A stretch of DNA of 64,000 nt from IMGVR_UViG_3300009514_000001:1-64000; one strand, 5' to 3'. Positions 13,472 to 32,471 are shown, counted from the first letter of the stretch. Program-made: numbers and translations. The notes: generated by a model from the letters alone, not told the origin.

Positions 13472-13614
13472 TGTTGGTTGGTACTACCCGATATCCCTTA
13501 CGGGATGTCGACAGGAGTTGGGGAAACGGCCCGTCGGCCAAGCCGGCATCTCTACCCGTTCTTCTTTCCCAGGTCAAGTCCAACCCCTGACCATCGTGCA
13601 AAGGAACCATCTAG

Positions 13615-14658: not shown

Positions 14659-14660
14659 CG

Positions 14661-15491
14661 ATGGGAGACATCTTCACCGACGCCAACAAGGGCTACTGGA
14701 GAGAGAAGAAAGCCCGGGCGAAAGCGGCTCGGCTCAAGGACGAAGCAGCCCAGAGGGAGGTAGAAGCCATGGGAGACGGACAATATCACGCTTGGAAGGA
14801 GCAAAGAGACAAGGAAGACAAGGAGAAGCTCCGCAAGAGCAAGCAGGTCACCGGTCACAGTGCCAAGAACATCATGCGGGTGATATCCTTGAGCGTTCCC
14901 CAAGAGGCCTGGGAAACAGTCGTCCAGGTCTTCCAGAACAATGGGATGCTTCTTCACGATACGAAGGTGCCAGAGCCCGACGGGGGGCCTCTGCTCGATG
15001 TCTGGATTCGACCGGATACGATTAGGACCCTCCCTCTCCCGGACCAGAAGGGGTTTTTCCTGGAACCCTCCAACCTTCGAACGTCGTACGACAGGGCCGA
15101 CGTGTTCATCCACGCGATGGTCCGACATACCTGTCCCGACGGCGGCACCAAGAAATGGACTCAGGACCACACTCTCGGCAGGACCGTGTGGGACAGCCAC
15201 CTCGGATTCCAGTGCCGCTGTGGCGTGTGGGTGGGCATCACCCAGGCCACGTTCCAGGCTCTCCCAAACTCCTGGGACAGCCTCCTGAGTGGACATAAGG
15301 AACGAGACCTCTTGGCCACCAGGACGGCATCCGACAAAGAGAACCTCCTCGGCGAGGTCGAAGAGATGGACGTAGGTGAGGACGTTCCCAAACTCACCCG
15401 AGAGGACCTCCAAGAGGCTCTAGGCAAGGGGAAGGTGTTTGTCCATACCGACCACGGCCTCCAGGCCGCCCCAGAGGACATTCTCAGCTAG
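14661..15491 (+). CDS. Hypothetical protein
   Basis: 276-aa ORF with GGAGG RBS. Confidence 0.65.
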   Translation: MGDIFTDANKGYWREKKARAKAARLKDEAAQREVEAMGDGQYHAWKEQRDKEDKEKLRKSKQVTGHSAKNIMRVISLSVPQEAWETVVQVFQNNGMLLHDTKVPEPDGGPLLDVWIRPDTIRTLPLPDQKGFFLEPSNLRTSYDRADVFIHAMVRHTCPDGGTKKWTQDHTLGRTVWDSHLGFQCRCGVWVGITQATFQALPNSWDSLLSGHKERDLLATRTASDKENLLGEVEEMDVGEDVPKLTREDLQEALGKGKVFVHTDHGLQAAPEDILS

Positions 15492-15492
15492 A

Positions 15493-15798
15493 ATGCGTAT
15501 CCCACACCGGTGCTCACGGTGTCAGGCGCGACATGCGTTCAAGTTCCACTGGCAGACGTACCGGAAGGTCATGAGGTGCGCCCAGTGTGGCTACGCCAAG
15601 TTCTACGTCGACAAGGCGAGGATGCGAAGAAACAACGGCAAACTGGCCTGTCTCTGTGACGCCTACCACTATCCTCACCGCTATCAGTCCGGTCAGTGTA
15701 TTCACGGCCCGAACCCGTATGGGTCTGTCTCGTTCGAGCCACCACCCCCGCCGTTCGACTACAGCGCGCCCGACGACGACGACGGGACGCCCTTCTAG
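15493..15798 (+). CDS. Small Cys/His-rich (Zn-binding) hypothetical protein
   Basis: CxxC, CxxC and CxC..H..C patterns. Confidence 0.55.
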   Translation: MRIPHRCSRCQARHAFKFHWQTYRKVMRCAQCGYAKFYVDKARMRRNNGKLACLCDAYHYPHRYQSGQCIHGPNPYGSVSFEPPPPPFDYSAPDDDDGTPF

Positions 15799-16028
15799 TC
15801 CCCGAACAGTTCCAGAATGCCAACGGGGCCTTCGTGGAGAGGCTCCCAGTTGGTCTCGAACTGCTCTTCGGACTCGACTCCGAACATGCCGACCGAACAC
15901 CCGGTGTCGTAATAGACGGTGCCGTCGATACGGTCGAGGACCTGACACTGATGAGCCGACGCAACTCGATGGCGGTACGTCGGCTCAAAGGGGTCGGCCT
16001 TCGTAAAGGTGTAGCCGTTCTTAGTCAA
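15795..16028 (-). CDS. Small hypothetical protein ending ILELFGD
   Basis: Follows ORF 16021-17170 on the same strand; the C-terminal motif recurs elsewhere. Confidence 0.4.
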   Translation of the reverse strand: MTKNGYTFTKADPFEPTYRHRVASAHQCQVLDRIDGTVYYDTGCSVGMFGVESEEQFETNWEPLHEGPVGILELFGD

Positions 16029-17170
16029 GGAAATCGCCCTTACGAGCCAGCCGCTCGGCTTCGCGGATGACAGTCGAGATGCTGGCCTCTCCCAGCTCCC
16101 GGGACCGCCTACCTAGACTCACCTCGTACTCTCCTCGGAAAGTGTCGTAGTGAACTCCGAGGTAGGTCCTCCCACCGAAGGCAGGGTCAGAGGCTTCGTT
16201 CCAGATAGAGATCCGGATAGAGTCGATACTCCGGTCGGCAGTGAGGTCGGAAGACAGGCCGTATTTTCGCTCGAAGTGATGAGCGATTTGTAGAAGAGCT
16301 TTCTTTGCCTTCGCTGGTGAGAGGGCCGCCCGGCGGTCAAGTCTCTTCGCGGCTTTCACAGCGAGGTAGGCGTCGTCCGAGGCGATACCGGAGTCCATCA
16401 GACTCTTGGCAACGTCTCTTTCCAAGAGACCGATGCCGAGCATCGAACGGGCCCTGTGAATCAGGCTTTCGTCGACCATTGCTTGAAGAGACCTCCCGGA
16501 AGACGCCGTCTCCCTGTCAGCAGCGACAACGGCGTCGAGGAGCTTGTTGCGGAGGGTCTCGTCCTGGACCGTCGAGGCGAACTTGATGGTGTCGGCTCGG
16601 AGGGCCTGATAGCCGTCGTTGCTTTCGGAGGCGACCATCTCCAGACCGCCACCCGCGGTCTCGTGCGCCGAGTCCCGGAGAGCGTCATTGACAGACCCGC
16701 CGCCGGTGTCGTCGACGTACTTGCGCAGCTTGCGAGAGAGGAAGTTAGCGAGTGATCTGAGTTCCTTGCGAGAGTCCTCGAACAGGTGGTCGAGGTCGCC
16801 GTCGAACATGGTCACTCCCTCTCCTCGGAGGGTCATGAACGCCAGGTAGTCGCCGTCGGCGTCCATGAAGGCGTCGGCCTGTTCGCCCAGGTCCTGGCCA
16901 GCCAGGTATCCCTTGAGAGGGTTCTGCTTGAACCAAGACTTGAGGGCCTTCTCCAGCTCCCTTTGGAACTTGTCGATGGCCTTCCCCACCTCTTTGGTGG
17001 CCTCGGCATCTCGGCCGTCCAGCCCCATCGACTCGGCCTCGCCCTGGACCAGCCAGTCCATCACGTCCGGGTCGTCGAGGGCGGCCATCTTCTCCAGGAT
17101 GGGCAGGATGTGCTCCTGGAGGTGAGGCTTGTCGGCGATGTAGCGAATGGTGGCGTCGCGAAGGCTCATG
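16021..17170 (-). CDS. Hypothetical protein, possibly virion-associated (LRDATIRYIADKPHLQEHILPIL motif)
   Basis: GAGGAG RBS; motif shared with ORF 56752-57705. Confidence 0.6.
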
Positions 17171-17252
17171 TGGAATCTCCTCAGGAGGTCTCGGGTCCAG
17201 ACCGCTGGTTCGTCACCCTGGTGCAATTATCGAAGCTCTAGTGGCTTAGGGG

Positions 17253-17281
17253 GGTCCTGTCCAGGCCCCGGTGCGGTATAC
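17253..17281 (+). promoter_or_regulatory. Putative phage promoter GGTCC-N18-GTATAC
   Basis: Exact spacing; upstream of ORF 17288 and the ligase N-half. Confidence 0.6.
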
Positions 17282-17287
17282 AGAGGT

Positions 17288-17644
17288 ATGGAGCTGAGGG
17301 AGTCCCCAATGGCCTGGAAAGTGGTTTACGATGGACGACGTGGGCAGAGTCTCCACCCGGTTGAGAAGCCGGCGCCCGAGTGCGTCTCGCCCCACTGTGA
17401 CTGCAAGACACAGTGGCCCAAGCCCTCTTGGGACAACCATCTGGGGTTTCGCTACGCCGATCACAGCAACCATTGGGAGGTCCGAGATGCCGCCCTAGCC
17501 CTGGACAACCGGGCTGAACGGGCGGTTCCATCCCTGTGGCTCGCCCACATGGAGGAGATCGGCCGCCCCGTGAGACAGGTCTCTTGGAGAGGGGCCCACG
17601 GCAAAATCCCGAAATTCTACAGAAGAAGAGGACAAGAGCAATGA
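17288..17644 (+). CDS. Hypothetical protein
   Basis: GAGG RBS; ATGA overlap with the ligase N-half. Confidence 0.55.
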   Translation: MELRESPMAWKVVYDGRRGQSLHPVEKPAPECVSPHCDCKTQWPKPSWDNHLGFRYADHSNHWEVRDAALALDNRAERAVPSLWLAHMEEIGRPVRQVSWRGAHGKIPKFYRRRGQEQ

Positions 17645-18756
17645 ACAAGAGCGCGCTCACCAGGAAGATTGAAGATGCCAGAAAGGCCTACTACGGACCT
17701 AACGCCCCTCTCATGACGGATGCCGAGTACGATGCTCTCGAAGACGAGCTTCGCCTCCTCGACCCCGAGCATTACCTGCTCATGACAACAGGGACTCCTC
17801 CTGGCGACAGCGGCTGGGAGAAGGTCTCCCACGGCATCCCGATGCGCTCACTCAACAAGGCCCAGGTCTTCGATGAGATGGGCACCTGGTTCAAGAGCCT
17901 GGGACAGGTCCCCTGCCCACCTCTGGAACCCTCTCTGGTATTGACCGAGAAGCTCGACGGGATCTCATGCTCCCTCCAGTACATCAAGGGCCGACTCGTC
18001 TCGGCCCTGACCCGAGGTGACGGTGCCGTGGGTGAGGATATCACCCGCAACGTCAGTCTGATGAAGGGCGTTCAACACCGGCTGCCGAAAGGACCCTATG
18101 AGAACTGGAGCGGCCACCTCCGAGGTGAGATCGTCTGTCGCCGGTCCGACTTCGAGAAGCACTTCAAGGGCTACTCGAATCCCCGGAACACGGCGAGCGG
18201 GACGGCCAAACGTGAGAGCGACCCGGAGCCCTGCAAACACCTGACGGTCATCGTCTACCAGATGGTTCCCGAGGGCGGCTACATGATTTCGAAGATGACG
18301 GAGCTGGAGACCATCCAGAGCCTCGGGTTCATCGCCCCCAACTACGTTGGCCTGAAGTTCGACCGCATCGAGTCCATCTACCGAGGGTACGTTGACGACC
18401 AACGGGAGCTGTTGGACTACGACATCGACGGCCTGGTCATCGAGGTCAACTCCCAGTCCTTCGCTGAGGACCTCGGCGAGCTGAACAAGAGACCCAAAGG
18501 TGCCGTCGCGTTCAAGTTCCCCCACGACTCCAAAGAGACTACCCTGGAGCGCGTCGAATGGCAGGTCGGCAACACCGGCCGCATCACGCCGGTGGCGGTG
18601 TTCAAGGCGGTCAACCTGGCCGGTGCCAACGTTACCCGGGCAAGTCTCCACAACGTGTCCTACGTCAAGTCACTCAATCTCCACGAGGGCGACAAGATTC
18701 TCGTCAGCCGACGAAATGACGTCATCCCGGCCGTAGAGTCCAACCTCTCAAGGTAA
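17641..18756 (+). CDS. ligA: NAD-dependent DNA ligase, N-terminal half (Ia + adenylation + OB domains)
   Basis: YY..D.EYD.L, EKLDG, RGDG..GEDIT, NPRN.ASG, DIDGLV, WQVG.TGRITPVA and RASLHN; stops right after VIPAV. Confidence 0.93.
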   Translation: MNKSALTRKIEDARKAYYGPNAPLMTDAEYDALEDELRLLDPEHYLLMTTGTPPGDSGWEKVSHGIPMRSLNKAQVFDEMGTWFKSLGQVPCPPLEPSLVLTEKLDGISCSLQYIKGRLVSALTRGDGAVGEDITRNVSLMKGVQHRLPKGPYENWSGHLRGEIVCRRSDFEKHFKGYSNPRNTASGTAKRESDPEPCKHLTVIVYQMVPEGGYMISKMTELETIQSLGFIAPNYVGLKFDRIESIYRGYVDDQRELLDYDIDGLVIEVNSQSFAEDLGELNKRPKGAVAFKFPHDSKETTLERVEWQVGNTGRITPVAVFKAVNLAGANVTRASLHNVSYVKSLNLHEGDKILVSRRNDVIPAVESNLSR

Positions 18757-19252
18757 CTAAGGAATCCGGTAAGAATGGCCAAAAAGAAAACTGGGTTCTC
18801 CCTGTTCAAAAACCCCGTCACCAGAATGAGCGCGACGCCTCTCGTAGAGCGAAGGGTGTCATGGAGAAGCTGGCTGGCGTCGGCTCGGCGTTCAACAAAC
18901 TCCCCAAGAGCCCGACACCCGTCAATCTCTTGGCCTTTGGAGTACAACTCCCAGAGGAGCCGACCAATCTCCTGGCCGACCTTCTTGTCCTGCCCCTCCT
19001 CGTTCCGGTCGAGGAACCAGAAGTTCTGGTCGCTCTTCGACCCTGAGGACACGACAGTCTCGTCCCAGAGCTTCGTCACCTTGACCTGGTCTTTGTTGCT
19101 CCCGAGGACCTCGGTGTTGGGGTGGTTGGCGAGCACGCGGCCGATGAGTTCGTGGAACTCGAACATCCAGAACTGCGTGAGAGAGGGGTCGGACGACGGG
19201 TCCAGGGCCTTCTCTGAGAGGAGCTTGGACAGACCGACGACTCCAAAGGGAG

Positions 19253-19969
19253 TTGTACGGCTCCCGTGTTGAGGTGATGAGTTCCGGTCGCTGGAACTCG
19301 ACCCTCCGTTCCTGGAACATCGGTGAGGATTCCCTCGAAAGCGAACAGACCAGTGCTCTCCTGGAGCGTATCGAGAGGTTCTTCGCTGCTGGGCATTCTC
19401 GGAGCATCATCCTTCATGGGTCCCCGGGAACGGGCAAGAGCGAGATGTCCAGGACGATCTCGAAGAGCCTCCAGGGGATGACCCTGTTCATCAACGCATC
19501 CGAGTTCAAGAGCCTCCAGTCGAATACTCTGTCCAACTGTCTCGACCTCCTCCACCCTGACATCGTCATCATCGACGACCTCGACTGTGTCTACGACGTC
19601 AAATCACTCCTCTCGGCCATCGACCGCATTCACCGGACCACCAGGCTGTTCATCGTGACAGCGAACGACCTGGAGTCCTTCGATGCTGCTGCGGTTCGGG
19701 CAGGGCGCTTCGACGAAATCGAGGTGGTCAGGAGAGTGGTCATGCCCGAGGACATGATTCCGGGCCTGGAGGAATCCGTCTACAAAGACCTCAACGACTG
19801 GCCCGTTGCCTTCGTCGAGGAGCTGGGGAAGAGGCTTGAAGTCCTGGGGGATGAGAGCCTGAGCGAGGAGATGGGACGACTCAAGGCCCGTGAGGAAGCA
19901 AACGTCGTCAACCGCAAACGGGGTGCCGCATCCCTAGAAGAAACTACGGAAGGTAGCAGTGATGAGTAA
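19253..19969 (+). CDS. AAA+ ATPase (N-terminal region 18775-19253 appears frameshifted)
   Basis: LHGSPGTGKS, IVIIDDLD, TAND and RAGRFD motifs. Confidence 0.8.
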   Translation: MYGSRVEVMSSGRWNSTLRSWNIGEDSLESEQTSALLERIERFFAAGHSRSIILHGSPGTGKSEMSRTISKSLQGMTLFINASEFKSLQSNTLSNCLDLLHPDIVIIDDLDCVYDVKSLLSAIDRIHRTTRLFIVTANDLESFDAAAVRAGRFDEIEVVRRVVMPEDMIPGLEESVYKDLNDWPVAFVEELGKRLEVLGDESLSEEMGRLKAREEANVVNRKRGAASLEETTEGSSDE

Positions 19970-21092
19970 CAAGACGTTCCTGACTGGTGTTCACGAGATT
20001 GACCGTGTGTTCGGTGGTCTACCAATCAACACGGTCTGGACCCACCTCGACATCGACTCGAAGAGGGGTGACAAGACCCTCGACAGATTCATGGCCGCCC
20101 TCCGCAAGCAAAATCTTCGCGCTATGTTCTTCGATGTCGTGCCGGAGGAGCGCCCTTCGGACTGGGACTTGGTTCTCGTCCGCTGCGACGAGGAGAGCTT
20201 CGTCGAACAACTTCGACGGGCCCAGCATCACAGCGTCTATGGGGGCGTCGGGACGATTCTCTCCGTCAACGTCCCCGAGCGGTTCCTCGACTTCGTCGAA
20301 CGGAAGGGGACCGTCGAACTGGCTCGCCTGTACCGAGGGGAGTTGGCTGAACGATGCGACCTGGTAACGGCCACCCTACCTCGGCCCTATGACGTCGGGA
20401 TTTGGATGAGCTGCCTCAAGTCCCGCCAACGGGGATTCGGCTCCTTCGAGTGGCCTCCTGTCGAGAGACTCCCCGACAAGCCGTCCCTATCTGAGGCGAT
20501 GAGTGTCATCGGCGACACCCTGGGCGACAACGCTCTCCTCGATGGTCTGTCCTGGGAACCTCGTGGGTCAGCATCGACGAGCTTCGGGACTACAACCGCA
20601 TCGACGAAAGTGATTGACGCCTTGGACATCGACGACCTGGTCCGTCGCCTTCCGGTAGGACAGAACGTCCGTCGCCTCGCTGTCCGCATCGTCCGCGAAG
20701 CGGGACAGCGTGGTGGCTCTGTGCTCGTCGACCTAGTGGCGAACCTGATCTCACGAGCCAATGAGGTCGACCTCTACGAAGAGGAACGCAACGAGGCCCT
20801 AGAGGACCTGGAGAGCCTCATCCTGGAGGTCAGCTTCGAGGGTCAGGACTTCGAAGAGTCCCTCAAATACTGGAAGTCTGTCGAACAACTCCGGAGACTG
20901 GAGAGCCTCATCCTGGAGGTCAGCTTCGAGGGTCAGGACTTCGAAGAGTCCCTCAAATACTGGAAGTCTGTCGAACAACTCCGGAGAAAAGCCATCGACC
21001 TCCTCATCGAGCACGGCGTCGACCGCGACGAGATGGACAGCGACCTTCTCAAGGGCATCAAACTACTGGCCGAGAGAGACGATGACGACTGA
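19962..21092 (+). CDS. Hypothetical protein with a degenerate RecA/DnaB-like N-terminus and a 90-bp internal duplication
   Basis: TGVHEIDRVFGGL; 20808-20897 equals 20898-20987. Confidence 0.55.
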   Translation: MSNKTFLTGVHEIDRVFGGLPINTVWTHLDIDSKRGDKTLDRFMAALRKQNLRAMFFDVVPEERPSDWDLVLVRCDEESFVEQLRRAQHHSVYGGVGTILSVNVPERFLDFVERKGTVELARLYRGELAERCDLVTATLPRPYDVGIWMSCLKSRQRGFGSFEWPPVERLPDKPSLSEAMSVIGDTLGDNALLDGLSWEPRGSASTSFGTTTASTKVIDALDIDDLVRRLPVGQNVRRLAVRIVREAGQRGGSVLVDLVANLISRANEVDLYEEERNEALEDLESLILEVSFEGQDFEESLKYWKSVEQLRRLESLILEVSFEGQDFEESLKYWKSVEQLRRKAIDLLIEHGVDRDEMDSDLLKGIKLLAERDDDD

Positions 21093-21399
21093 CCCTACGA
21101 CCATCCGCTGGTACCTCTGGGAAGCCGACGACGGCTCCAGCAGCTATTACTCTCCCTCTCCCGGACACCCCGACAGACATCTGAAGGAGGAGGACAGGGA
21201 CCCCTATACCCTGGCCAAGACCTTCGACGTCGTCGGGTGCGGCAAGGAGTGCTGGGACGAGAACAACCCGCCAGAAACTCCACACAACGACATGTGCAGG
21301 ACCTGCTATTGCACTGGTATGCAGGCCCTGTACGACCACTACGACTGGGAGGCGTACAACCCACCTCTCCCTGGAACCTTCAAGGACGACGATGTCTGA
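21082..21399 (+). CDS. Small hypothetical protein (CxxxC, CxxC)
   Basis: Overlapping, coupled ORF. Confidence 0.5.
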   Translation: MTTDPTTIRWYLWEADDGSSSYYSPSPGHPDRHLKEEDRDPYTLAKTFDVVGCGKECWDENNPPETPHNDMCRTCYCTGMQALYDHYDWEAYNPPLPGTFKDDDV

Positions 21400-21679
21400 C
21401 GACCCAGTCCTCGCCCTCGCTCCCTTAGTGCCGGTCGACGGGGTTTTGGAGCCGGTGTATGACGCCGTGTTGGTTGACGTTGGGCCCAACCGTTTGGCCA
21501 CCCTCAGGAGGCTCCGCATCGGTCTCTGGCCCGACCTTGGCCTCCTGGAGGTCAAGAGACGGATGGACAAGCTCCCTGTCATCCTGCGGGAGGACATCGA
21601 CCTCTCCGATGCCCAGGACATCAAGAGGGAGTTCTCTCGCTTCGGGGCTCGGGTCGAGATCGTACCTGGGTCCAGTTAG
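21392..21679 (+). CDS. Ribosomal protein bL12 (L7/L12) C-terminal-domain-like protein
   Basis: YDAVLVDVGPNRL...LGLLEVKRRMDKLPVILREDIDLSDAQDIK.EFSRFGARVEI aligns by eye with the bL12 CTD. Confidence 0.65.
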   Translation: MSDDPVLALAPLVPVDGVLEPVYDAVLVDVGPNRLATLRRLRIGLWPDLGLLEVKRRMDKLPVILREDIDLSDAQDIKREFSRFGARVEIVPGSS

Positions 21680-21697
21680 GTGAGCTAGGTCGTATAA
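21669..21697 (+). promoter_or_regulatory. Putative phage promoter GGTCC-N18-GTATAA
   Basis: Exact spacing; upstream of ORF 21729. Confidence 0.65.
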
Positions 21698-21728
21698 CCA
21701 GGTGCTACAACTGACAAGGAGACTACGG

Positions 21729-22127
21729 ATGGCAAGACGACTCAACGACCTATTCAAGCGCGTACAACGACGACGAGGCCCTGGACTCGCTGACCTCAGC
21801 GACCTGAAGAAGCGCCTGGGCATCGAGGAAGCAGAACCCCATGAGGCCCTTCTCAGCTACCCGATGGCGGTAGCCTCTCGCTTTGCCGCGGCGGCCGGAA
21901 CCCTGCGGGACAAGGTCGACACAATGGACCCCTTGGATGGGTTGGTTGAAGTCGGTCGGGCCAAAGCCCTTGCCGGAATCATCCGGTCACAGGAGGGGGA
22001 GGCCAAAGCCGAGGAGATATTGACCATCCTCGGGGTCGATCTGAAGGGTCTCCAGCGGCGCCTGGAGGAACGCCTGGTCGAGGAGATGACCGATCTCGTC
22101 ACCAACTCCCTCTCGGGAGGTGAGTAG
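21729..22127 (+). CDS. Hypothetical protein
   Basis: AGGAG RBS. Confidence 0.55.
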   Translation: MARRLNDLFKRVQRRRGPGLADLSDLKKRLGIEEAEPHEALLSYPMAVASRFAAAAGTLRDKVDTMDPLDGLVEVGRAKALAGIIRSQEGEAKAEEILTILGVDLKGLQRRLEERLVEEMTDLVTNSLSGGE

Positions 22128-22717
22128 TGACCCACATCGAACGCGAGCACAAGTGGACCGTAAGGCCCTTCTTCCACTTCCCTGTCGGCAGCTTCGACCG
22201 CAAACACGATATTTGGACCCCTCACGGCGTTTTGGTGGGAGACGGAAAGTATGCTCCCTCCACGGAGAAGCGTATCATCCAGGTGTACCTGGACGGCACC
22301 AGTCTCGACCTCCGCAACACCGAACGCATCCGCCTCATCAAGGAGGACGGCAAGTGTCGCTTCTTCCACACCCACAAGACTCACCGGACCGCGGGGGAGG
22401 CCTACGAGACGGAGAAGGAGATTACGAACACGGAGTTCTCTCGCCTCTACCGGACCTTTCGCAGCCCTCTGGCCAGTGACCTCGTCAAGACTCGTCGGAC
22501 GTTCACCTGGAAAGACATTGTCTGGGAGATGGACAAGTTCGACCAGCCCACCTACTCCCGGTATCTGCTGGAGGCTGAGGTCGAGGACTTGTCCGCCACT
22601 CTGGAACCACCCCCTCTCTGGTCCGTGACCAAAGTTACGGGGGACCCGAAGTACTCCAACGCTTACCTGGCCCTCACCGAGCTGGGCCGGCTCCTTTGGG
22701 AGGACACTAGAACATGA
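22127..22717 (+). CDS. CYTH-domain (triphosphate tunnel metalloenzyme) protein
   Basis: N-terminal EREHK (ExExK), RIR, K.R and EAEVE motifs; C-terminal VTGDPKYSN. Confidence 0.85.
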   Translation: MTHIEREHKWTVRPFFHFPVGSFDRKHDIWTPHGVLVGDGKYAPSTEKRIIQVYLDGTSLDLRNTERIRLIKEDGKCRFFHTHKTHRTAGEAYETEKEITNTEFSRLYRTFRSPLASDLVKTRRTFTWKDIVWEMDKFDQPTYSRYLLEAEVEDLSATLEPPPLWSVTKVTGDPKYSNAYLALTELGRLLWEDTRT

Positions 22718-23388
22718 CTCACCCACTCATTCGTCCGGGCAAGATTGTCCTCCTCACCGGCTATCCCGAGAGCGGGAAGACGACTGAGGCCCTGAAGGCC
22801 TCCGCCGAAGTCAACAACGAAGGCGGAGCCGTGTTCTACGTCGATGCGTGCAACCAATTCGACCACCAGTTCGCCGAACACCTGGGGGTGCCGGTGACTG
22901 ACAAGGAAGCGTTCGGGCTGATGTACGCCTCCGTCATCGACCAGGCTGTCCTGGTGTCGAAAGCGGCCATCAAGTCTGGAGTCGACCTGCTCGTCCTGGA
23001 CATGGTCAATGCCATGGTCGAGCCCGGGGCGGAGACTTTCTCCCTGGTGGACCAGGAGGACCGGGCGGACGAGGTGCTCAGGGCCCGAGCCCGAGAGAGG
23101 GAGGACTTCTTGGAGATGTCCCAGGAGGAGGTCATCGAAGGTGATCCCGAAGAAGGCATCGACACGGAAGAGGAAATGGACACCGTAGACGTCCCTGAGA
23201 GCCCCGAGGAGCTGGCCCTTGCCGAGACGTGGCAAGAGCACCTGGAAGGTATCCAGGAGGCTCTCAGAAGCTCTCACACGGCTGTCCTGGCCCTCTGGGG
23301 AACGTCCCGCAAGTTCCTCAACACCAAGGGTGCGTATGTCCCCTGGTCGAAGGCCGCCGAAGCCGTCCTCGACGTGGAGTCCCTCTGA
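22714..23388 (+). CDS. Short RecA-like ATPase with an acidic insert
   Basis: GKIVLLTGYPESGKTT, FYVDA...D..FA..LGV and VDLLVLD. Confidence 0.75.
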   Translation: MTHPLIRPGKIVLLTGYPESGKTTEALKASAEVNNEGGAVFYVDACNQFDHQFAEHLGVPVTDKEAFGLMYASVIDQAVLVSKAAIKSGVDLLVLDMVNAMVEPGAETFSLVDQEDRADEVLRARAREREDFLEMSQEEVIEGDPEEGIDTEEEMDTVDVPESPEELALAETWQEHLEGIQEALRSSHTAVLALWGTSRKFLNTKGAYVPWSKAAEAVLDVESL

Positions 23389-24011
23389 TGAGCACTGACA
23401 TCTGTAGCAACCTGCGCGTCGCCACCGGCGGCTACCTGATGAACATCAGGCGGGCGTCCGACAACATGATGCAGGCAGTTTCACAGCCCAAAACTCTGGA
23501 GGAGAGGGCAGAGACCTCTTTCATGAGTATGCTGGAGACCGTCAGAAAAGCCTGTGCTTGTGACTGGTTCACGATGGCCGAGTACGACCAGATGTCCCGC
23601 TTCAACGGATTTGAGTCTGAGCCGGAGCTTCCCACCGGGATGGTCCTCCTTCACACGCTCCGACACTCCTTGGGCGGGTTCGTCGCCACGTTCCCGAAGA
23701 ACCCCGAGGAGGAAGTCATCCTGCCGACCATCTCCGATGTGATGGAGGCCCTGATGAGCTTCGAGTACGTCCTGAACTTCGAGGAGGAAGAGGAAGGGGA
23801 AGAGGAAGAACACACCCAGGGGCCGTGGAAGGGGACGGGGACGTACAAATTCATCAGCCAGGTCACGGTCGACGGACCCGAACTGCACTTAAGTGAGGTC
23901 GCCCTGACTTCGGAGGAGACCGCCGCCTTCGAGGTGATGACTCCAGCGCAGCAGGACCTCTTTCTTCTCAGCCGCAGCCTAGAAGACTCCGAGGAGGAGG
24001 GTCAACCATGA
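23388..24011 (+). CDS. Acidic hypothetical protein
   Basis: TGATG coupling to the RecA-like gene. Confidence 0.55.
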   Translation: MSTDICSNLRVATGGYLMNIRRASDNMMQAVSQPKTLEERAETSFMSMLETVRKACACDWFTMAEYDQMSRFNGFESEPELPTGMVLLHTLRHSLGGFVATFPKNPEEEVILPTISDVMEALMSFEYVLNFEEEEEGEEEEHTQGPWKGTGTYKFISQVTVDGPELHLSEVALTSEETAAFEVMTPAQQDLFLLSRSLEDSEEEGQP

Positions 24012-24356
24012 AAGAAAAGACCATGAATGCCAGAGTCACGAGAACGATGCTCGGGTTCGAGGACCACGGCATTCTGACCGCCCTTGTGGACGTCACCTTT
24101 GCTGATGGCGGACAGGGCTTCGGTGGTCTGTTCCTCGACAACGCCAACCTCGCCTGGTTCGTCAAGGCGTCCTCAAGGCGGTGGGTGTCGACAAGTGGGG
24201 AAGCCTCAAGGGCAAGCCGTGTCGAGTTAGGGGCACCGCCGTGAAGCTCACGGCCATTGGCCACTTCATCGACGACGAGTGGTTCGACATTACGAACCCG
24301 CCTCCAGTCGACTCGGAGAACGTCCCCGCCCCCGATAAGGGATACGAGATCGTCTA

Positions 24357-24385
24357 GGTCCTGAGGAGATTCGGAACCCGTACTA
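24357..24385 (+). promoter_or_regulatory. Putative phage promoter GGTCC-N18-GTACTA
   Basis: Exact spacing; directly upstream of the ligase C-half. Confidence 0.6.
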
Positions 24386-24412
24386 GAAGATAGAACAGCC
24401 AATGAGGAGACC

Positions 24413-25252
24413 ATGAACATTCTCGACATGTTTGGTGACGAGGAAGACCAGGCCCAGCTGACCAGCCAGCCAATCGCCATCCCCACCCACTGCCCGGAGT
24501 GCGAGTTCCCGCTCCGGATGGACGGGGAGTACCTGGTGTGCAAGAACGGCAAGGCCTGTCCCGCTCAGGTGACGGGGGCAATGAAAGCCTGGATTTCCAA
24601 GCTGGGCATCCTTCACTTCGGCACCTCTCTCATCGAGGCCATCGTCGAATCCGGCTTGGCCAAGACTGTTCCCGACCTCTACCGACTCAAGGCGCCCCAG
24701 GTGGCGGCACTGACGATGTCCGGCCGGCGCGTCGGCGACAGCACGGCCCACACTGCCCTCTCCAACCTACACGCCAAGAAGGACCTGGCTCTGGCTACTA
24801 TGGTCGGTTCCCTGGGCATCCCGATGGTTGCCCGAAGCATGTGCAAGACCATCGCCCAGGGAGGTTTCGATACCATCGACCTGATGATGGTGGCCAAGGT
24901 CGACGACGTGGCCGCCATCCCGGGTGTCGGCCAGAGCAAGGCCGAGAGCTTTGTTGCCGGCATCGCCGAGCGCAAGGAGATCATCGAAGACCTCCTGGAG
25001 GTGGGAGTCACCATCAAGGCGGCGGCCGACGGACCCCTCAGGGGCAAGCTCTTCTGCATGACCGGGTTCCGCTCGAAGGAGATGGAAGAGGCCATCGAAG
25101 ACGCTGGCGGCATCATCAAGTCGGGCGTCAGCCGCAAGCTCGATTTTCTGGTTGCGGACGACCCGGATTCGACCAGCGGCAAGCCCAAGAAGGCCCGCAG
25201 GTACGGCGTACCCATCATCGACAAGGCGACACTCTGGGGGATGGTATCGTGA
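24413..25252 (+). CDS. ligA: NAD-dependent DNA ligase, C-terminal half (Zn finger + HhH + BRCT)
   Basis: PTHCPEC...C.N..ACPAQ, LGI..V, IPGVG..KA, LRGKLFCMTG, SGVSRKLDFLV and KARRYGVPII; own GAGGAG RBS. Confidence 0.9.
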   Translation: MNILDMFGDEEDQAQLTSQPIAIPTHCPECEFPLRMDGEYLVCKNGKACPAQVTGAMKAWISKLGILHFGTSLIEAIVESGLAKTVPDLYRLKAPQVAALTMSGRRVGDSTAHTALSNLHAKKDLALATMVGSLGIPMVARSMCKTIAQGGFDTIDLMMVAKVDDVAAIPGVGQSKAESFVAGIAERKEIIEDLLEVGVTIKAAADGPLRGKLFCMTGFRSKEMEEAIEDAGGIIKSGVSRKLDFLVADDPDSTSGKPKKARRYGVPIIDKATLWGMVS

Positions 25253-26082
25253 ATGACCATACACTCGTCGATGCCCTCCTAGAGGGCATCTGTGACAACC
25301 TCGAACGACATCAGGCAAAGGCCCAAGGACCGAAAAGCGAGGTCAAGAAGTTCGCTCAACTCGTCCGAAAAGAGTTGGAAAACGATGTCCTGGCAAGAGT
25401 CTCCCGAAGCCAAGCCAACGAGTTGCGTCTGGAGTTTGTTCGCGCCCTCGACTTCTGCCTCCACTGTGGTGAGGACACCCGAGACCGTGTCTGCTACTGC
25501 TACCGAGACGAATGAGGTGTCATGGCTACCGCCCTCACTACCGCCCGCACTCTGGTCCAGATGGACCTGCCGCCACCCCCAGGCATTGATGACTGGGCCG
25601 CTCCGGAGGGTGTCCTCTCCCCCACGGAGGTGAAGGAGCTGCGTATTGGCCGCAAGCTCTTGATGCACGGCTGGGTCGAGTTCGGCTACCCTGAGGACTC
25701 CCTCTCCCGACGAGGGGTTGTACACCCCGTGGAGGGGCCTCCCCTGGAGGTCTACTTCATCGGCTGGCGGTACCGATGCGAGGGTGTCCGCACACCTGGG
25801 CACAAGGCCGGCTGGTCGGGCGTAGACCACTGGGACCCGGGCTCGCCTTCGGAGTTCTCCATGAAACGGAGAGTTCTCGTCGTGCAGGTCAAGAGGGGAC
25901 CTGGGTCGAGGATTGAGGAAACCCTCCCCTCTCAAGTGACGAGGAAGAGATGACCATCCAGGTCGAACAAGAGATGTACGGATGGACCCTGGAGCCCCTA
26001 CGGAACCAGACTCGGGACATGGAAGAGTTTGCTCAGAAGATAAACGACTTCCTTGTCGCAATGGGGATTGACGCCCCGACCT
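25249..26082 (+). CDS. Three small hypothetical ORFs (25249-25515, 25522-25953, 25950-26082)
   Basis: Coupled starts and stops after the ligase C-half. Confidence 0.5.
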
Positions 26083-26159
26083 GACGACGGTAAGGTCCGC
26101 GGCGCTACTCATTTAGAGCCACGGGCCTTTGAGGCCCCTCACTCCCCGAGGAGGGAACC

Positions 26160-26438
26160 ATGAACAAGAATGAACTGATCACCGCCGTCCACAACAACAA
26201 TGACAACCTCACCAAGAAGCAGGTGGAGCAAGTCATCTCCACCTTCTTCAACGTGACCGCCAACGAGCTGAAGTCCGGCGGCGCGGTCAGATACCACGGA
26301 TTCGGTTCGTTCACCGTCTCCCAGCGGAACGCTCGTAAGGGCCGCAATCCGCAGACCGGCAAAGCCATGAACATTCCGGCCAAGAGAATCGTGAAGTTCA
26401 AAGCCGCCAAGACTCTCTCGGAAACCGTCAACGTCTGA
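26160..26438 (+). CDS. hup: HU/IHF-family DNA-binding protein
   Basis: MNKNELI, GFGSF..RNARKGRNPQTG..IPAKR.VKFKAAK.L. Confidence 0.95.
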   Translation: MNKNELITAVHNNNDNLTKKQVEQVISTFFNVTANELKSGGAVRYHGFGSFTVSQRNARKGRNPQTGKAMNIPAKRIVKFKAAKTLSETVNV

Positions 26439-26466
26439 GCCGACAGTCGACCGAGAGCACCATAGA

Positions 26467-26496
26467 GAGGGGACTCTGACCCAGGGTCCCCTCTCC
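26467..26496 (+). terminator. Hairpin after HU
   Basis: AGAGGGGAC...GTCCCCTCT inverted repeat. Confidence 0.5.
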
Positions 26497-26557
26497 TCGT
26501 TTCGAGGAGGTACCATGAGCCTCGTCAGCTCAAACCCCTACTCCTGAGGATACCAGC

Positions 26558-27688
26558 ATGATCATCGAGTATATCTGGATTGACGGAACCGGGCCAACGC
26601 CCCAGCTCCGAAGCAAGACCAAGGTCGACAACAACAACAAGTCCCGGCTGGTGACAGAAGCCGTCCAGGACGGATTGGTAGCCACCGACGACGACGACAA
26701 CATCCCAGAGAACCTGCGTGAGTGCTATCTCGGCCCTGTCTGGGGCGCCGACGGCAGTTCGACGAACCAGGCGGCAGGAAAGGACTCCGACATCATCCTC
26801 GTCCCTGTCTGCTCAGTACGGGACCCGTTCCGGGCCAACGCCTTCCTGAACCTTTGTGAGGTCCTCGACAGCAAGGGAGAGCCTCACTCAAGCAACACCC
26901 GGGCGAAATTCCGAAAAGTCCTCACCCCACGGAGGCACTTCCAGCCTTGGCTCGGCCTGGAGCAGGAGTACACCCTCCTGACGCTCTCTAACCACGTGTC
27001 CTTGGATGCCAAGGGCAACACGGCCTTCGTCCTGGACCCCCTCGGGTTTGTAGCTCAGAAGGGCTACCCCAGACCCCAGGGTCCCTACTATTGTGGGGTC
27101 GGAGCCAACAACATCTACGGCCGAGGGGTCTACGAGGAATTCCTCAAGGCCACCTCCCTCGCCGGCATTGCCATCACGGGGGCCAACTGGGAGGTCATGC
27201 CTGGACAGGCTGAGTTCCAGGTCTCTGCCCCGGAAGCTCTCCTGACCTGCGACCATCTCTGGCTCGCCAGGTGGATTATCCAGCGCGTCGCGGAGGACCA
27301 CAGGGCCGTCGTGTCCTTCGATCCCAAACCGGCCGATGGTGACTGGAACGGCGCCGGTATGCACGCCAACTTCTCCACCGGGGTGATGCGAAGCCGGGAT
27401 GGACTCGACGTCATCAAAGAGGCCTGTGACCAGCTCGAAGAGCACGTCCAAAAGCACCTAGACGCCTACGGCGAGGGCTACGAACGTCGCCTCACGGGCG
27501 ACCACGAGACGTGCTCCTTCCAAGAGTACCGGTGGGGCATCGCTGACCGGACGGCCAGCGTCCGCATCCCCCTCCAAGTCAAGGAGGATGGCAAGGGCTA
27601 CCTAGAGGACCGTCGGCCAAACGCCAACGCCGACCCGTACAACGTCGGCCGGGTCCTCGTCGACACCATCTGTCGTCGGTTCACCTAG
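26558..27688 (+). CDS. glnII: Glutamine synthetase type II
   Basis: EYIWIDG, DGSST, EQEY, PQGPYYCGVG, EVMPGQ.EFQ, DWNGAGMH.NFST, LTG.HET and GYLEDRRP. Confidence 0.95.
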   Translation: MIIEYIWIDGTGPTPQLRSKTKVDNNNKSRLVTEAVQDGLVATDDDDNIPENLRECYLGPVWGADGSSTNQAAGKDSDIILVPVCSVRDPFRANAFLNLCEVLDSKGEPHSSNTRAKFRKVLTPRRHFQPWLGLEQEYTLLTLSNHVSLDAKGNTAFVLDPLGFVAQKGYPRPQGPYYCGVGANNIYGRGVYEEFLKATSLAGIAITGANWEVMPGQAEFQVSAPEALLTCDHLWLARWIIQRVAEDHRAVVSFDPKPADGDWNGAGMHANFSTGVMRSRDGLDVIKEACDQLEEHVQKHLDAYGEGYERRLTGDHETCSFQEYRWGIADRTASVRIPLQVKEDGKGYLEDRRPNANADPYNVGRVLVDTICRRFT

Positions 27689-31080: not shown

Positions 31081-31082
31081 TT

Positions 31083-32346: not shown

Positions 32347-32471
32347 CTTTTGGTAAGTTTCGGAGAACGGTTGATGACCCCTCAGGGAGGGTATGACGTG
32401 CTGACGGCCAAGGGTGTGAGAGTCGTCCAACTGGTCTACTTCGGTCCCATCAAGGGTCGGGTACTCAAGTC

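What the first reader, a model, noticed from the sequence alone, without database searches (positions are those of the whole stretch)
17641..25252. Naturally split NAD-dependent DNA ligase with separately promoted halves 5.7 kb apart
Seen: ORF 17641-18756 has Ia, adenylation (KLDG) and OB domains and stops cleanly after VIPAVESNLSR. ORF 24413-25252 begins with a ~19-aa new leader and then PTHCPEC, exactly where LigA continues (Zn finger, HhH, BRCT). About nine genes lie between them. Each half has its own RBS and an upstream GGTCC-N18-GTA motif (17253, 24357). No intein Cys/Ser start or His-Asn end and no intron is visible. Both halves are intact in a window full of pseudogenes. Inference: a two-subunit LigA assembled in trans, or an independent nick-binding clamp module.
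Basis: partly seen in the sequence, partly recalled or inferred. Interest (0 to 1): 0.8.

Follow-up and report, generated by a model that had tools for sequence, protein, structure and literature searches.

The report
Split phage DNA ligase, halves dislocated
A jumbo phage encodes its NAD-dependent DNA ligase as two separate, conserved genes 5.7 kb apart; two-subunit ligases are already known from T5-like phages, but here the break traces to a mobile endonuclease cassette and the halves have since drifted apart.

Summary
ORF 17641-18756 encodes LigA domains Ia, adenylation and OB. ORF 24413-25252 encodes Zn finger, HhH and BRCT. They meet exactly at the OB|Zn linker, with 10-11 ORFs between them. 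Contigs from a second sample reproduce both junctions, so it is not a misassembly.

Both halves are under purifying selection (dN/dS 0.20 and 0.11). Their catalytic and Zn motifs are intact. Each is preceded by a conserved promoter-like motif. The best reading is a two-subunit ligase assembled in trans.

That idea is not new. T5 has ligA/ligB, and a PR1-phage heterodimeric ligase on nicked DNA is in the PDB (9hu3).

New here:
- The window sits in an all-split clade of jumbo-phage ligases.
- Relatives carry one family of TnsA-like endonuclease genes exactly at the split.
- All split alleles share a junction tail and a mosaic 3' end, which fits spread as a homing cassette.
- Relatives form a series: adjacent halves, endonuclease between, 2 kb apart, and 5.7 kb here with no endonuclease left.

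The C-subunit's "leader" is a conserved terminal peptide (ILDMFG). It resembles sliding-clamp-binding motifs and recurs at the ends of three other ORFs in the window. This is a new variant of a known kind, of moderate interest.

The parts
17253..17278 (+). Promoter-like motif GGTCC-N18-GTA upstream of the small-ORF plus LigA-N operon
   Evidence: One of 10 sites in the window against 1.6 expected. Each site lies 30-70 nt upstream of an ORF start. The equivalent site, GGTCCACTT...GGTA, is conserved upstream of the same operon in L090.
17309..17644 (+). 111-aa ORF of unknown function; its stop overlaps the LigA-N start codon (ATGA)
   Evidence: JGI gene call and sequence. L090 has the same arrangement with a 4-nt overlap.
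17641..18756 (+). LigA-N, the catalytic subunit: domain Ia, nucleotidyltransferase (KLDG) and OB fold; 371 aa; ends ...VIPAVESNLSR-stop
   Evidence: Pfam and PDB matches. Motifs I, III, IV (Asp) and V and the Ia residues are conserved. dN/dS 0.20 against L090. A contig from a second sample is identical apart from one mismatch (L102).
18660..19166 (-). Minus-strand ORF (168 aa) related to the N-terminal domain of L090's 674-aa AAA protein; its 3' end overlaps the end of LigA-N
   Evidence: GC3 phasing shows minus-strand coding at 18760-19240. 29% identity to L090 AAA residues 54-162.
19253..21092 (+). AAA ATPase in two overlapping ORFs (19253-19969 core; 19959-21092 C-terminal part fused to a homologue of L090's 125-aa gene, with a perfect 90-bp tandem duplication)
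   Evidence: Pfam AAA 4.7e-13. Alignments to L090. Duplication at 20808-20987.
21082..24357 (+). Rest of the intervening block. ORFs: 21082-21399; 21392-21679 (L7/L12 C-terminal-domain-like); 21702-22127; 22127-22717 (weak CYTH-like hit, below Pfam cutoff); 22714-23388 (RecA-like); 23388-24011; 24008-24244; 24241-24357. A further promoter-like motif lies at 21669-21694.
   Evidence: Pfam, JGI gene calls, motif. These genes are unrelated to those between the halves in L098 and L099. No endonuclease remnant was found.
24357..24382 (+). Promoter-like motif GGTCCTGAG...CGTACTAGA, 30 nt upstream of the LigA-C start
   Evidence: Conserved upstream of the C-half in L097, the relative with 88% C-half identity.
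24404..24409 (+). Shine-Dalgarno GAGGAG of LigA-C
   Evidence: Sequence read directly.
24413..25252 (+). LigA-C, the DNA-binding subunit: N-terminal leader, Cys4 Zn finger, HhH and BRCT; 279 aa
   Evidence: Pfam and PDB matches. AF2 mean pLDDT 93.2 and pTM 0.80; best structural matches are LigA C-terminal regions and 9hu3 chain B. dN/dS 0.11 against L097. The second-sample contig L104 is 99.94% identical.
24419..24439 (+). Conserved terminal peptide ILDMFGD (residues 3-9) followed by an acidic spacer; resembles a clamp-binding short linear motif
   Evidence: F7 and G8 are nearly invariant in the clade. The peptide is present in all C-halves of the window's clade. It is absent from other split lineages, T5 LigB and fused linkers. 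pLDDT is 63-67 for residues 1-20. The same motif sits at the termini of other ORFs in the window.

Best explanation
The two ORFs are the two subunits of one NAD+-dependent DNA ligase.

LigA-N (Ia, NTase, OB) would carry out adenylylation and nick-sealing chemistry. LigA-C (Zn, HhH, BRCT) would supply the DNA-binding half that, in single-chain LigA, closes the protein ring around the nick. The two are made separately and would assemble on nicked DNA, as in the T5/PR1-type heterodimeric ligase.

The gene was fractured in an ancestor of this jumbo-phage clade. A free-standing TnsA-like (PD-(D/E)xK) endonuclease cassette inserted into the DNA that encodes the OB|Zn linker. The cassette supplied the new stop (tail ...NL(D/S)...) for the upstream piece and the new start for the downstream piece.

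In the window's lineage the endonuclease gene was later lost. About 5.7 kb of unrelated genes now lies between the pieces. Each piece keeps its own ribosome-binding site and a promoter-like element of the same class, so they are probably co-expressed.

Shown:
- domain content, exact split point and intact motifs;
- purifying selection on both halves;
- a clade-wide split;
- the endonuclease at this site in relatives;
- a shared junction tail and mosaic 3' ends;
- independent assemblies of both junctions.

Inferred:
- physical assembly and ligase activity;
- co-expression;
- the order of events (insertion, loss, dislocation).
For: Domain content and split point.

The split is real and inherited:
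- The ten best N-half hits (56-76% identity) are 362-384 aa with adenylation and OB domains only.
- The window lies in a 14-row all-split clade, SH-aLRT 95.
- L102 and L104, from a second sample, reproduce both junctions.
- L090 and L097, from unrelated samples, share the separated arrangement on the N and C sides.

Function is retained:
- dN/dS is 0.20 (N) and 0.11 (C), against 0.29 and 0.44 for neighbouring genes.
- The KxDG Lys, RGDG, motif III Glu, motif IV Asp, motif V Lys and domain Ia residues are conserved. The four Zn Cys are invariant.
- The C-half model has pLDDT 93.
- N and C divergences correlate across 15 genomes, Spearman 0.79.

Precedent:
- T5 ligA/ligB (PMC3632103).
- 9hu3, 'PR1 phage heterodimeric DNA ligase in complex with 21-mer nicked DNA', is split at the same linker.

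Origin:
- A TnsA-like_N endonuclease gene lies exactly between the halves in L012, L093/94, L095 and L096. The four belong to one family, 39-70% identical.
- All 48 split N-halves share the tail VE(A/S)NL(D/S).... None of 75 fused proteins has it.
- Fused/split sister pairs are 0.8-0.95 identical mid-gene but 0.2-0.6 identical in the last 60-80 aa. Split alleles from different clades share that 3' end.
- Graded series: adjacent halves (L091, L017); endonuclease between (L093 and others); 4 genes, about 2 kb (L098); 6 genes, about 2.2 kb (L099); 5.7 kb (window).

Framework: homing-endonuclease insertions split phage genes into functional pieces (PMC2988022). The 'fractured genes' model includes later dislocation of the parts (PMC2677866).

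Promoter-like motifs.
Against: - There is no biochemical or expression evidence for this phage. No sequencing runs were listed, so transcription and read-level continuity could not be examined.
- No multimer prediction was possible, so N-C contact is inferred only by analogy.
- No endonuclease remnant survives in the window. The insertion-then-loss history rests on relatives.
- The T5-type split is a separate lineage, so mechanistic transfer from 9hu3 is by analogy.
- The whole phage LigA family, fused and split, has Glu/Asp/Ile where E. coli has motif IV Lys290, so its chemistry may differ in detail.
- 'Split' for most tree rows is inferred from protein length and tail, not from inspected loci.
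- The tree was built with the quick method, and recombination violates its assumptions.
Confidence: 0.78

Rival explanations
1. The halves no longer work as one enzyme. LigA-C would have become an independent DNA- or nick-binding scaffold, tethered through its ILDMFG peptide to a hub such as a sliding clamp. LigA-N would act alone or with another partner.
For: - The leader is a conserved, flexible terminal peptide found only in this clade.
- It recurs at the termini of three other ORFs, which points to a hub other than LigA-N.
- The halves sit in different transcription units with 10-11 genes between them.
- From memory, isolated LigA N-terminal fragments can self-adenylylate.
Against: - Wherever the contig is long enough, both halves co-occur in every genome of the clade.
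- Their divergences are correlated.
- Both carry the same class of promoter-like motif.
- From memory, isolated N-terminal LigA fragments are poor at nick joining without the C-terminal domains.
- Clamp tethering and heterodimer function are compatible with each other.
Confidence: 0.13
2. The ORFs are decaying remnants of a ligase gene broken by rearrangement in a degenerating genome region, and the phage relies on the host ligase.
For: - The adjacent AAA ATPase gene is in pieces and partly on the opposite strand.
- The region carries a 90-bp duplication.
- More distant relatives have a fused gene.
Against: - dN/dS is 0.11-0.20, lower than for neighbouring genes.
- There are no internal stops and all catalytic and Zn residues are kept.
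- The split is shared by a whole clade with up to about 45% amino-acid divergence.
- The RBS and promoter-like motifs are conserved.
Confidence: 0.03
3. Assembly artefact: the 222-kb contig wrongly joins two regions or two phages, and the real genome has a contiguous or adjacent ligase.
For: In the second sample, contig L102 ends at window 19440. Contig L104 diverges from the window left of 19541, into 53% GC sequence.
Against: - L102 covers the N-half stop plus 684 nt with one mismatch. L104 covers 19541-27380 at 99.94%.
- The 100-nt gap between them lies inside an AAA domain that aligns continuously, Walker A to Walker B, with L090's protein.
- L090 independently places the AAA gene downstream of its N-half.
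- L097 has the same genes upstream and downstream of its C-half and no N-half upstream.
Confidence: 0.02
4. The pieces are re-joined after transcription or translation into one polypeptide, by a split intein, trans-splicing, an intron or ribosomal bypass.
For: Relative L099 does have an intein-type fracture with a Vsr/DUF559-like endonuclease, but at a different site (Ia|NTase). Fractured genes with split inteins are known in phages, including one ligase (PMC2677866).
Against: - LigA-N ends 5 residues after the OB fold, with no Hint or intein N-fragment (Pfam).
- LigA-C starts with a 20-residue leader that has no His-Asn followed by a Cys/Ser/Thr junction.
- No Rfam intron or other RNA family was found in 17000-26000.
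- The interval holds 10-11 ORFs with their own promoter-like motif.
- T5/PR1-type enzymes work as heterodimers without re-joining.
Confidence: 0.02

Closest known systems
Heterodimeric NAD+-dependent DNA ligase of T5-like phages (T5 ligA/ligB; PR1 phage ligase, PDB 9hu3/9i5i)
   Same: The split falls at the same inter-domain linker. Subunit A ends just after the OB fold (...GGVIPKIVEKVED) and subunit B starts just before the Zn finger (MKIQIPTHCPIC). T5 also has promoters annotated between the two genes. The PDB title states a heterodimer bound to nicked DNA.
   Different: - The T5 genes are adjacent, about 200 nt apart. Here they are 5.7 kb apart with 10-11 ORFs between.
- T5 LigA lies on a separate, very long branch.
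- T5 LigA lacks the NL(D/S) tail, and T5 LigB lacks the ILDMFG leader.
- No endonuclease is associated with the T5 split in the record I read.
Phage genes split by free-standing homing endonucleases (Aeh1 nrdA/mobE, T4 topoisomerase gene/mobA, phage 25 gene 43) and the 'fractured genes' model
   Same: An essential DNA-metabolism gene that is contiguous in relatives is divided where an endonuclease gene sits in other relatives. The pieces keep their order and orientation and appear functional (PMC2988022; PMC2677866). The 5' end of the cassette supplies the stop and its 3' end supplies the start, as in L012. There is mosaic co-conversion next to the site.
   Different: - The endonuclease is a TnsA-like PD-(D/E)xK enzyme, not HNH, GIY-YIG or Vsr-like.
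- The host gene is LigA, at the OB|Zn linker.
- In the window the endonuclease is gone and the pieces are dislocated by 5.7 kb. The model predicts this stage, but I did not find it described for a ligase.
Single-chain bacterial LigA (E. coli 2owo, T. filiformis 1dgs)
   Same: All six modules are present in the canonical order across the two ORFs. The halves match E. coli LigA with E-values of about 7e-50 (N) and 7e-20 (C).
   Different: There are two polypeptides. The family has Glu/Asp/Ile at the position of E. coli motif IV Lys290. The DNA-binding half carries an extra N-terminal peptide.
Sliding-clamp-binding short linear motifs (bacterial Q-phi-x-[L/M]-[F/L]; T4 gp43 tail SLDFLFG)
   Same: The LigA-C leader ILDMF matches positions 2-5 of the bacterial consensus. 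It lies in a flexible terminus with acidic flanks (PMC11139829). It also resembles the T4 polymerase and gp55 tails. DNA ligase is a reported beta-clamp partner.
   Different: Position 1 is hydrophobic instead of Gln. No clamp gene was seen in the 64-kb window. Binding is untested.

Membership tests
NAD+-dependent DNA ligase (LigA) | Nucleotidyltransferase domain with the KxDG lysine and motifs III, IV and V | tested here: met
   KLDG, TRGDG, RGE, DIDG and AFKFP are present and conserved. Exception: the residue equivalent to E. coli motif IV K290 is Glu, as in the whole phage family.
NAD+-dependent DNA ligase (LigA) | Domain Ia with NMN-binding residues (Y-[HY] ... D-x-x-Y-D) | tested here: met
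   AYYG...TDAEYDAL aligns to the E. coli Ia motif and is conserved family-wide. Nlig-Ia hit in the JGI precomputed Pfam.
NAD+-dependent DNA ligase (LigA) | OB fold, Cys4 zinc finger, HhH and BRCT in that order | tested here: met
   OB in the N-half. The four Cys are invariant, and HhH and BRCT are in the C-half.
NAD+-dependent DNA ligase (LigA) | All modules on one polypeptide | tested here: not met
   Two ORFs 5,656 nt apart.
Heterodimeric phage LigA (T5/PR1 type) | Split between the OB fold and the Zn finger into A (catalytic) and B (DNA-binding) subunits | tested here: met
   9hu3_A aligns to N-half residues 100-366. 9hu3_B residue 3 aligns to C-half residue 21.
Heterodimeric phage LigA (T5/PR1 type) | Adjacent ligA-ligB genes | tested here: not met
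   The T5 genes are 200 nt apart. The window's are 5.7 kb apart.
Heterodimeric phage LigA (T5/PR1 type) | Common descent of the split with the T5 lineage | tested here: not met
   T5 LigA is a separate long branch outside the jumbo-phage family. The junction tails differ. The long branch makes its placement uncertain.
Heterodimeric phage LigA (T5/PR1 type) | The subunits form a complex on nicked DNA and seal it | not testable with these tools
   No multimer prediction or assay was available.
Gene fractured by a free-standing homing endonuclease | Contiguous gene in relatives, and pieces in the same order and orientation | tested here: met
   Fused ORFs of about 640 aa in L002-L005 and many others. 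Both halves lie on the + strand in N-then-C order.
Gene fractured by a free-standing homing endonuclease | Endonuclease gene between the pieces | tested here: not met
   None in the window. It is met in relatives L012, L093/94, L095 and L096.
Gene fractured by a free-standing homing endonuclease | Patchy distribution, with mosaic or co-converted flanks shared among invaded alleles | tested here: met
   At least 13-21 state changes on the tree. Shared tail. The identity drop in the last 60-80 aa is shared across clades.
Gene fractured by a free-standing homing endonuclease | The endonuclease cleaves the uninterrupted allele at the insertion site | not testable with these tools
   Requires an enzyme assay.
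Split intein / fractured gene with intein | N-intein at the end of the upstream piece, and a C-intein ending in His-Asn plus a nucleophile at the start of the downstream piece | tested here: not met
   No Hint or intein hit in either half. See the termini. L099 does have this arrangement at the Ia|NTase site.
Sliding-clamp-binding motif | Q-phi-x-[L/M]-[F/L] in a disordered terminal or loop region, often with acidic flanks | tested here: inconclusive
   ILDMF matches positions 2-5, is terminal, has low pLDDT and has acidic flanks. Position 1 is Ile, not Gln. Clamp binding is untested.

The most novel reading that the evidence does not exclude
The gene fission gave the DNA-binding subunit a free N-terminus that carries a sliding-clamp-binding-type peptide (ILDMFG plus an acidic spacer).

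The same terminal peptide ends at least two small proteins (15795-16028 and 62527-62781). A looser version ends a 666-aa protein (54765-56765). That would define a phage-wide hub-binding motif.

On this reading the ligase is recruited to Okazaki-fragment nicks through a clamp-tethered LigA-C, which then captures LigA-N. The new terminus would be a selective reason why the split persists and why the genes can drift apart.
Probability: 0.3. Interest if true: 0.7.

Novelty: new variant of a known kind. Interest (0 to 1): 0.5.

Why it matters
Two-subunit NAD-dependent ligases are known from T5-like phages. This locus and its relatives add three things.

1. They document how such a split arises and evolves. 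The stages seen are a mobile TnsA-like endonuclease cassette at the OB|Zn linker, lateral spread with co-converted flanks, loss of the endonuclease, and progressive dislocation of the halves up to 5.7 kb. The fractured-gene model predicts this late stage, but I did not find it described for a ligase.

2. The family supplies natural fused, adjacent and separated variants. These suit experiments on how LigA domains assemble around a nick.

3. The conserved terminal peptide on the DNA-binding subunit, shared with other proteins of the phage, is a testable lead to a recruitment hub, possibly a sliding clamp, in an uncultured jumbo phage. It could explain why fission is tolerated or favoured.

For annotation, LigA halves in phage genomes should not be called pseudogenes merely because they are short or far apart.

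Tried and rejected
- **Read-level check.** The look-up of sequencing runs listed no run for 18650-24600 or for 24300-25260. Contigs from a second sample were used instead.
- **Introns and ribozymes.** Rfam at the E-value threshold gave no match over 17000-26000.
- **Sigma-70 promoters.** None were found in 17000-25600. Terminator-like hairpins were no more frequent than in shuffles.
- **Endonuclease remnant in the window.** tblastn with the four TnsA-like proteins, and Pfam on the intervening ORFs, found nothing.
- **Homology among the intervening genes.** The genes between the halves in the window, L098 and L099 are unrelated, so the separation has no common inserted module.
- **Fine synteny with the IMG/VR relatives L002-L005.** They are too diverged. 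Only the RecA-like gene and one neighbour recur.
- **L104 breakpoint.** I first read the breakpoint at window 19541 as possible misassembly of the window. I rejected this because the AAA domain is continuous against L090.
- **AAA 'inversion'.** I considered a recent inversion. At only 29% identity it is old, or it reflects a paralogous domain.
- **Leader as a docking peptide specific to LigA-N.** This is disfavoured because the same motif ends other proteins, and because T5-type and other split lineages lack it.
- **Identity of the other motif-bearing proteins.** Pfam, PHROGs, NCBIfam and the ESM Atlas gave nothing above noise.
- **Literature.** No paper on the PR1 heterodimeric ligase, or on non-adjacent LigA halves, was found in the searchable library. 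That is not proof that none exists.
- **Multimer structure prediction.** It was not possible with the tools on hand.

Full report
**What is there**

The window is the first 64 kb of a 222-kb IMG/VR viral contig, IMGVR_UViG_3300009514_000001. Window and contig coordinates coincide. GC is about 60%.

ORF 17641-18756 (371 aa) matches the LigA adenylation domain (1.7e-41) and OB domain (1.3e-24). It aligns to E. coli LigA residues 21-388.

ORF 24413-25252 (279 aa) matches BRCT and HhH. It aligns to E. coli LigA 400-666 and T. filiformis LigA 397-656, including the four Zn-finger cysteines.

The break is therefore exactly in the linker between the OB fold and the Zn finger. Both start codons have Shine-Dalgarno sequences. 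No Hint or intein domain is present, the termini carry no intein junction residues, and no Rfam family matches in 17000-26000.

Gene calls and GC3 phasing give 10-11 ORFs between the halves:
- a minus-strand ORF at 18660-19166;
- an AAA ATPase in two ORFs;
- an L7/L12 C-terminal-domain-like protein;
- a weak, sub-threshold CYTH-like protein;
- a RecA-like protein;
- several ORFs of unknown function.

**Is it an artefact?**

No sequencing runs were listed for this DNA. However, a second metagenome (3300009537) gave two independent contigs.
- L102 equals window 12456-19440 with one mismatch. It covers the N-half, its stop codon and 684 nt beyond.
- L104 equals window 19541-27380 at 99.94%. It covers everything from inside the AAA gene through the C-half and beyond.

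The 100-nt gap between them lies inside an AAA domain. That domain aligns without a break, Walker A to Walker B, to the 674-aa homologue in L090. L104's unmatched left 1.8 kb is 53% GC and is the likelier chimera or variant.

Two unrelated samples also show the same separated organisation.
- L090 (N-half 76% identical) has the N-half followed by small ORFs and the AAA gene, with no C-half in the remaining 3.7 kb.
- L097 (C-half 88% identical) has homologues of the window's upstream and downstream genes around its C-half, and no N-half upstream.

**Are the halves functional?**

Nei-Gojobori dN/dS is 0.20 for the N-half (against L090) and 0.11 for the C-half (against L097). Two neighbouring genes give 0.29 and 0.44.

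The following are conserved:
- the KxDG lysine;
- TRGDG;
- the motif III Glu;
- the motif IV Asp;
- the motif V Lys;
- the domain Ia Y-Y...D-x-x-Y-D signature.

The Zn cysteines are invariant in the clade.

One departure is a Glu at the position of E. coli motif IV Lys290. It is shared by the whole phage family, fused and split alike, so it is unrelated to the split.

The C-half is predicted as a confident standalone fold (mean pLDDT 93.2, pTM 0.80). Its best structural matches are LigA C-terminal regions and chain B of 9hu3.

Across 15 genomes, pairwise identities of the N and C parts correlate (Spearman 0.79). The two halves of the window therefore share one history, and the C-half was not acquired separately.

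**What is already known**

T5 encodes ligA (323 aa) and ligB (259 aa) about 200 nt apart, with two promoters annotated between them. They are described as ligase subunits A and B (PMC3632103).

PDB 9hu3/9i5i is titled 'PR1 phage heterodimeric DNA ligase in complex with 21-mer nicked DNA containing phage nick sequence' (released 2026-01-14). Its chains are close relatives of T5 LigA and LigB. Chain A ends just after the OB fold and chain B starts at the Zn finger, the same linker as here.

So a natural two-subunit LigA, even one with separately promoted halves, is not new. I found no paper on that structure in the searchable library.

**Distribution among relatives**

In a search of 5.8 billion proteins, the ten closest N-half relatives (56-76% identity) are all 362-384 aa with adenylation and OB domains only. 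Beyond them, forms of about 370 aa and about 640 aa are intermixed. The four closest IMG/VR relatives (45-49%) have an uninterrupted ORF of about 640 aa.

A maximum-likelihood tree of 134 adenylation-plus-OB regions puts the window in a 14-member all-split clade (SH-aLRT 95). It needs 21 split/fused changes, of which at least 13 are forced by well-supported branches. T5 lies on a separate long branch.

Inspected loci form a series:
- halves adjacent: L091/92 with one in-frame stop and a restart 10 nt later, and L017/18/20 with a 95-nt gap in another frame;
- one gene between: L012, L093/94, L095, L096;
- four genes, about 2 kb: L098;
- six genes, about 2.2 kb: L099, whose N-half is further broken at Ia|NTase by an N-intein plus a DUF559/Vsr-like endonuclease;
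- 5.7 kb: the window.

**Origin of the split**

The single gene between the halves in L012, L093/94, L095 and L096 is a TnsA-like PD-(D/E)xK endonuclease (PF08722, 33-49 bits against a cutoff of 26.5). L093's copy also has a weak NUMOD3 hit. The four belong to one family (39-70% identity) although their host ligases lie in different clades.

In L012 the endonuclease ORF overlaps the last 50 nt of the N-half, and its stop overlaps the ATG of the C-half. The cassette therefore supplies the new stop and the new start, as the fractured-gene model proposes (PMC2677866).

All 48 split N-halves end with the same tail, VE(A/S)NL(D/S)(E/L)G(I/V)xN..., which is shortened in the window's clade to NLSR, NLSNH or NLSIS. 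None of 75 fused proteins has it.

In ten fused/split sister pairs, identity is 0.8-0.95 in the middle of the gene but falls to 0.2-0.6 in the last 60-80 residues. Split alleles from different clades share that 3' segment (...RASLAGV.QVE.L.LF.GC.(I/V)LVS...).

This is the mosaic pattern expected from co-conversion during homing. It explains the patchy distribution better than many independent nonsense mutations would.

The window has no endonuclease remnant. The genes between the halves in the window, L098 and L099 are unrelated to each other. After the fracture, different material accumulated in the gap in different lineages.

Homing-endonuclease insertions that split nrdA, the T4 topoisomerase gene and gene 43 into functional pieces are the established precedents (PMC2988022).

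**Expression signals**

GGTCC-N18-GTA occurs 10 times in the window against 1.6 expected, with 0 of 100 shuffles reaching 10. Nine sites are on the + strand.

The fuller consensus is GGTCCAnTT-N13-CGTAt(a/t)a. Each site lies 30-70 nt upstream of an ORF start that has a Shine-Dalgarno sequence.

The site at 24357 is 30 nt before the C-half and is conserved in L097. The site at 17253 precedes a 111-aa ORF whose stop overlaps the N-half ATG, and an equivalent site is conserved in L090.

Both halves are therefore probably driven by the same class of phage promoter. From memory, the -35 GGxxC / -10 CGTA layout recalls ECF-sigma promoters. I did not test this.

**The leader**

C-halves of the window's clade begin with M(x)1-4 followed by phi-phi-x-[LM]-[FL]-G. 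Examples are ILDMFG, ILTMFG, MLSMFG, LLTMFG and IFTMFG. A variable Pro-rich or acidic spacer of 10-20 residues then precedes the Zn finger.

Other split lineages and T5 LigB start only 8-15 residues before CPxC. Fused linkers (median 17 residues) lack the motif.

In the AF2 model, residues 1-20 have pLDDT 63-67 and do not pack on the body.

The strict pattern IL[DE][LM]FG[DE] occurs three times in 17,558 ORF residues of the window, each time at a terminus:
- the LigA-C N-terminus;
- the C-terminus of ORF 15795-16028 (...GILELFGD), whose L090 homologue ends ...GILGLFGE;
- the C-terminus of ORF 62527-62781 (...GILDLFGD).

A looser version (...ELMDLLGI) ends the 666-aa ORF 54765-56765. That makes four terminal hits against 0.11 expected, with 0 of 2000 shuffles reaching four.

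The bacterial clamp-binding consensus is Q-phi-x-[L/M]-[F/L], with QLDLF the strongest. It lies in disordered termini with acidic flanks. The Gln is important but not essential, and ligase is a listed beta-clamp partner (PMC11139829; PMC4976356).

T4 DNA polymerase ends ...SLDFLFG and gp55 ends ...SLDFLYEAND. From established knowledge, these are the tails that bind the gp45 clamp.

The leader therefore looks like a hub-binding motif, possibly for a sliding clamp. It does not look like a peptide specific to LigA-N. This remains a lead. No clamp gene was seen in the 64 kb, and the other motif-bearing proteins could not be identified.

**Verdict**

The 'two-subunit LigA' interpretation is supported by comparative evidence and by a solved precedent, so it is not categorically new.

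Four points do appear to be new:
1. The window belongs to a large jumbo-phage LigA family in which the OB|Zn linker is the target of a mobile TnsA-like endonuclease cassette.
2. Mosaic junctions document the cassette's lateral spread.
3. The halves have been progressively dislocated, up to 5.7 kb here, while both stay under selection.
4. A conserved terminal peptide on the DNA-binding subunit is shared with other proteins of the phage.

I rate this a new variant of a known kind, with moderate interest.

Noticed in passing
window 37934-45473: Phage-encoded type I-C-like CRISPR-Cas locus. It has a weak Cas3-like ORF at 37934-39985, Cas8c/Csd1 at 40553-42655 (132 bits) and Cas7 at 42609-43613 (188 bits). 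An array of 23 repeats (GTCGTCTTCTCGAAAGAGGAGACGGGAGATTTCAAC, spacing about 72 nt) lies at about 43790-45473. Spacer targets were not examined.
   Followed up: partly
window 15795-16028 (-), 62527-62781 (-), 54765-56765 (-): Three ORFs end in the same peptide that starts LigA-C...GILELFGD*...GILDLFGD* and ...ELMDLLGI*. Terminal enrichment is significant. The proteins have no recognisable family. They may be clients or competitors of the same hub.
   Followed up: partly
window 1205, 9988, 17253, 21669, 24357, 27733, 33197, 37937, 58154 (+) and 61648 (-): A family of promoter-like sites, GGTCCAnTT-N13-CGTAt(a/t)a, each 30-70 nt upstream of an ORF start. No sigma-70-like promoter was found in 17-25.6 kb. 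The layout recalls ECF-type promoters (from memory, untested). No sigma factor gene was identified in the window.
   Followed up: partly
window 18660-21092: The AAA ATPase next to LigA-N is in pieces relative to the single 674-aa ORF of L090. An N-domain-like segment lies on the minus strand (18924-19247), the core at 19253-19969, and the C-part at 19959-21092 in another frame, fused to a homologue of L090's 125-aa gene.
   Followed up: partly
window 20808-20987: A perfect 90-bp tandem duplication (30 aa repeated twice) inside ORF 19959-21092. It is also present in the second-sample contig L104.
   Followed up: no
window 29500-32350: An IS200/IS605-type element: a resolvase-like ORF, a D12-class methyltransferase-like ORF and OrfB/TnpB (Cas12f-like) at 31111-32346. 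It coincides with a GC dip to 0.53.
   Followed up: no
L104:1-1819 against window 19541: The second-sample contig diverges from the window inside the AAA gene into 53% GC sequence that encodes a DUF2062 protein. It is either a chimeric assembly or a structural variant.
   Followed up: partly
window 18418-18450 (N-half residues 260-270) and the whole family alignment: The motif IV lysine (E. coli K290) is replaced by Glu/Asp/Ile in this phage LigA family, in fused and split members alike. Bacterial-type outgroups keep Lys and T5 has Arg.
   Followed up: partly
L099:5347-7841: In this 191-kb relative, LigA is additionally fractured between domain Ia and the NTase domain. An N-intein (Hint) fragment is followed by a DUF559/MTES_1575 (Vsr-like) endonuclease gene. 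This is the classic 'fractured gene' layout, so that ligase is encoded in three pieces.
   Followed up: partly
window 7641-35250 and relatives L091, L093, L095: The ligase neighbourhood is rich in NAD/ADP-ribose and RNA-repair genes in the window and several relatives. These include ADP-ribosylglycohydrolase, PARP, HAD 'Swiss army knife' RNA-repair domains, NYN, GmrSD_N, S-AdoMet lyase and a Gln-synthetase-like gene.
   Followed up: no
window 21392-21679: A 95-aa protein with a ribosomal L7/L12 C-terminal-domain match (1.1e-08) is encoded between the ligase halves.
   Followed up: no
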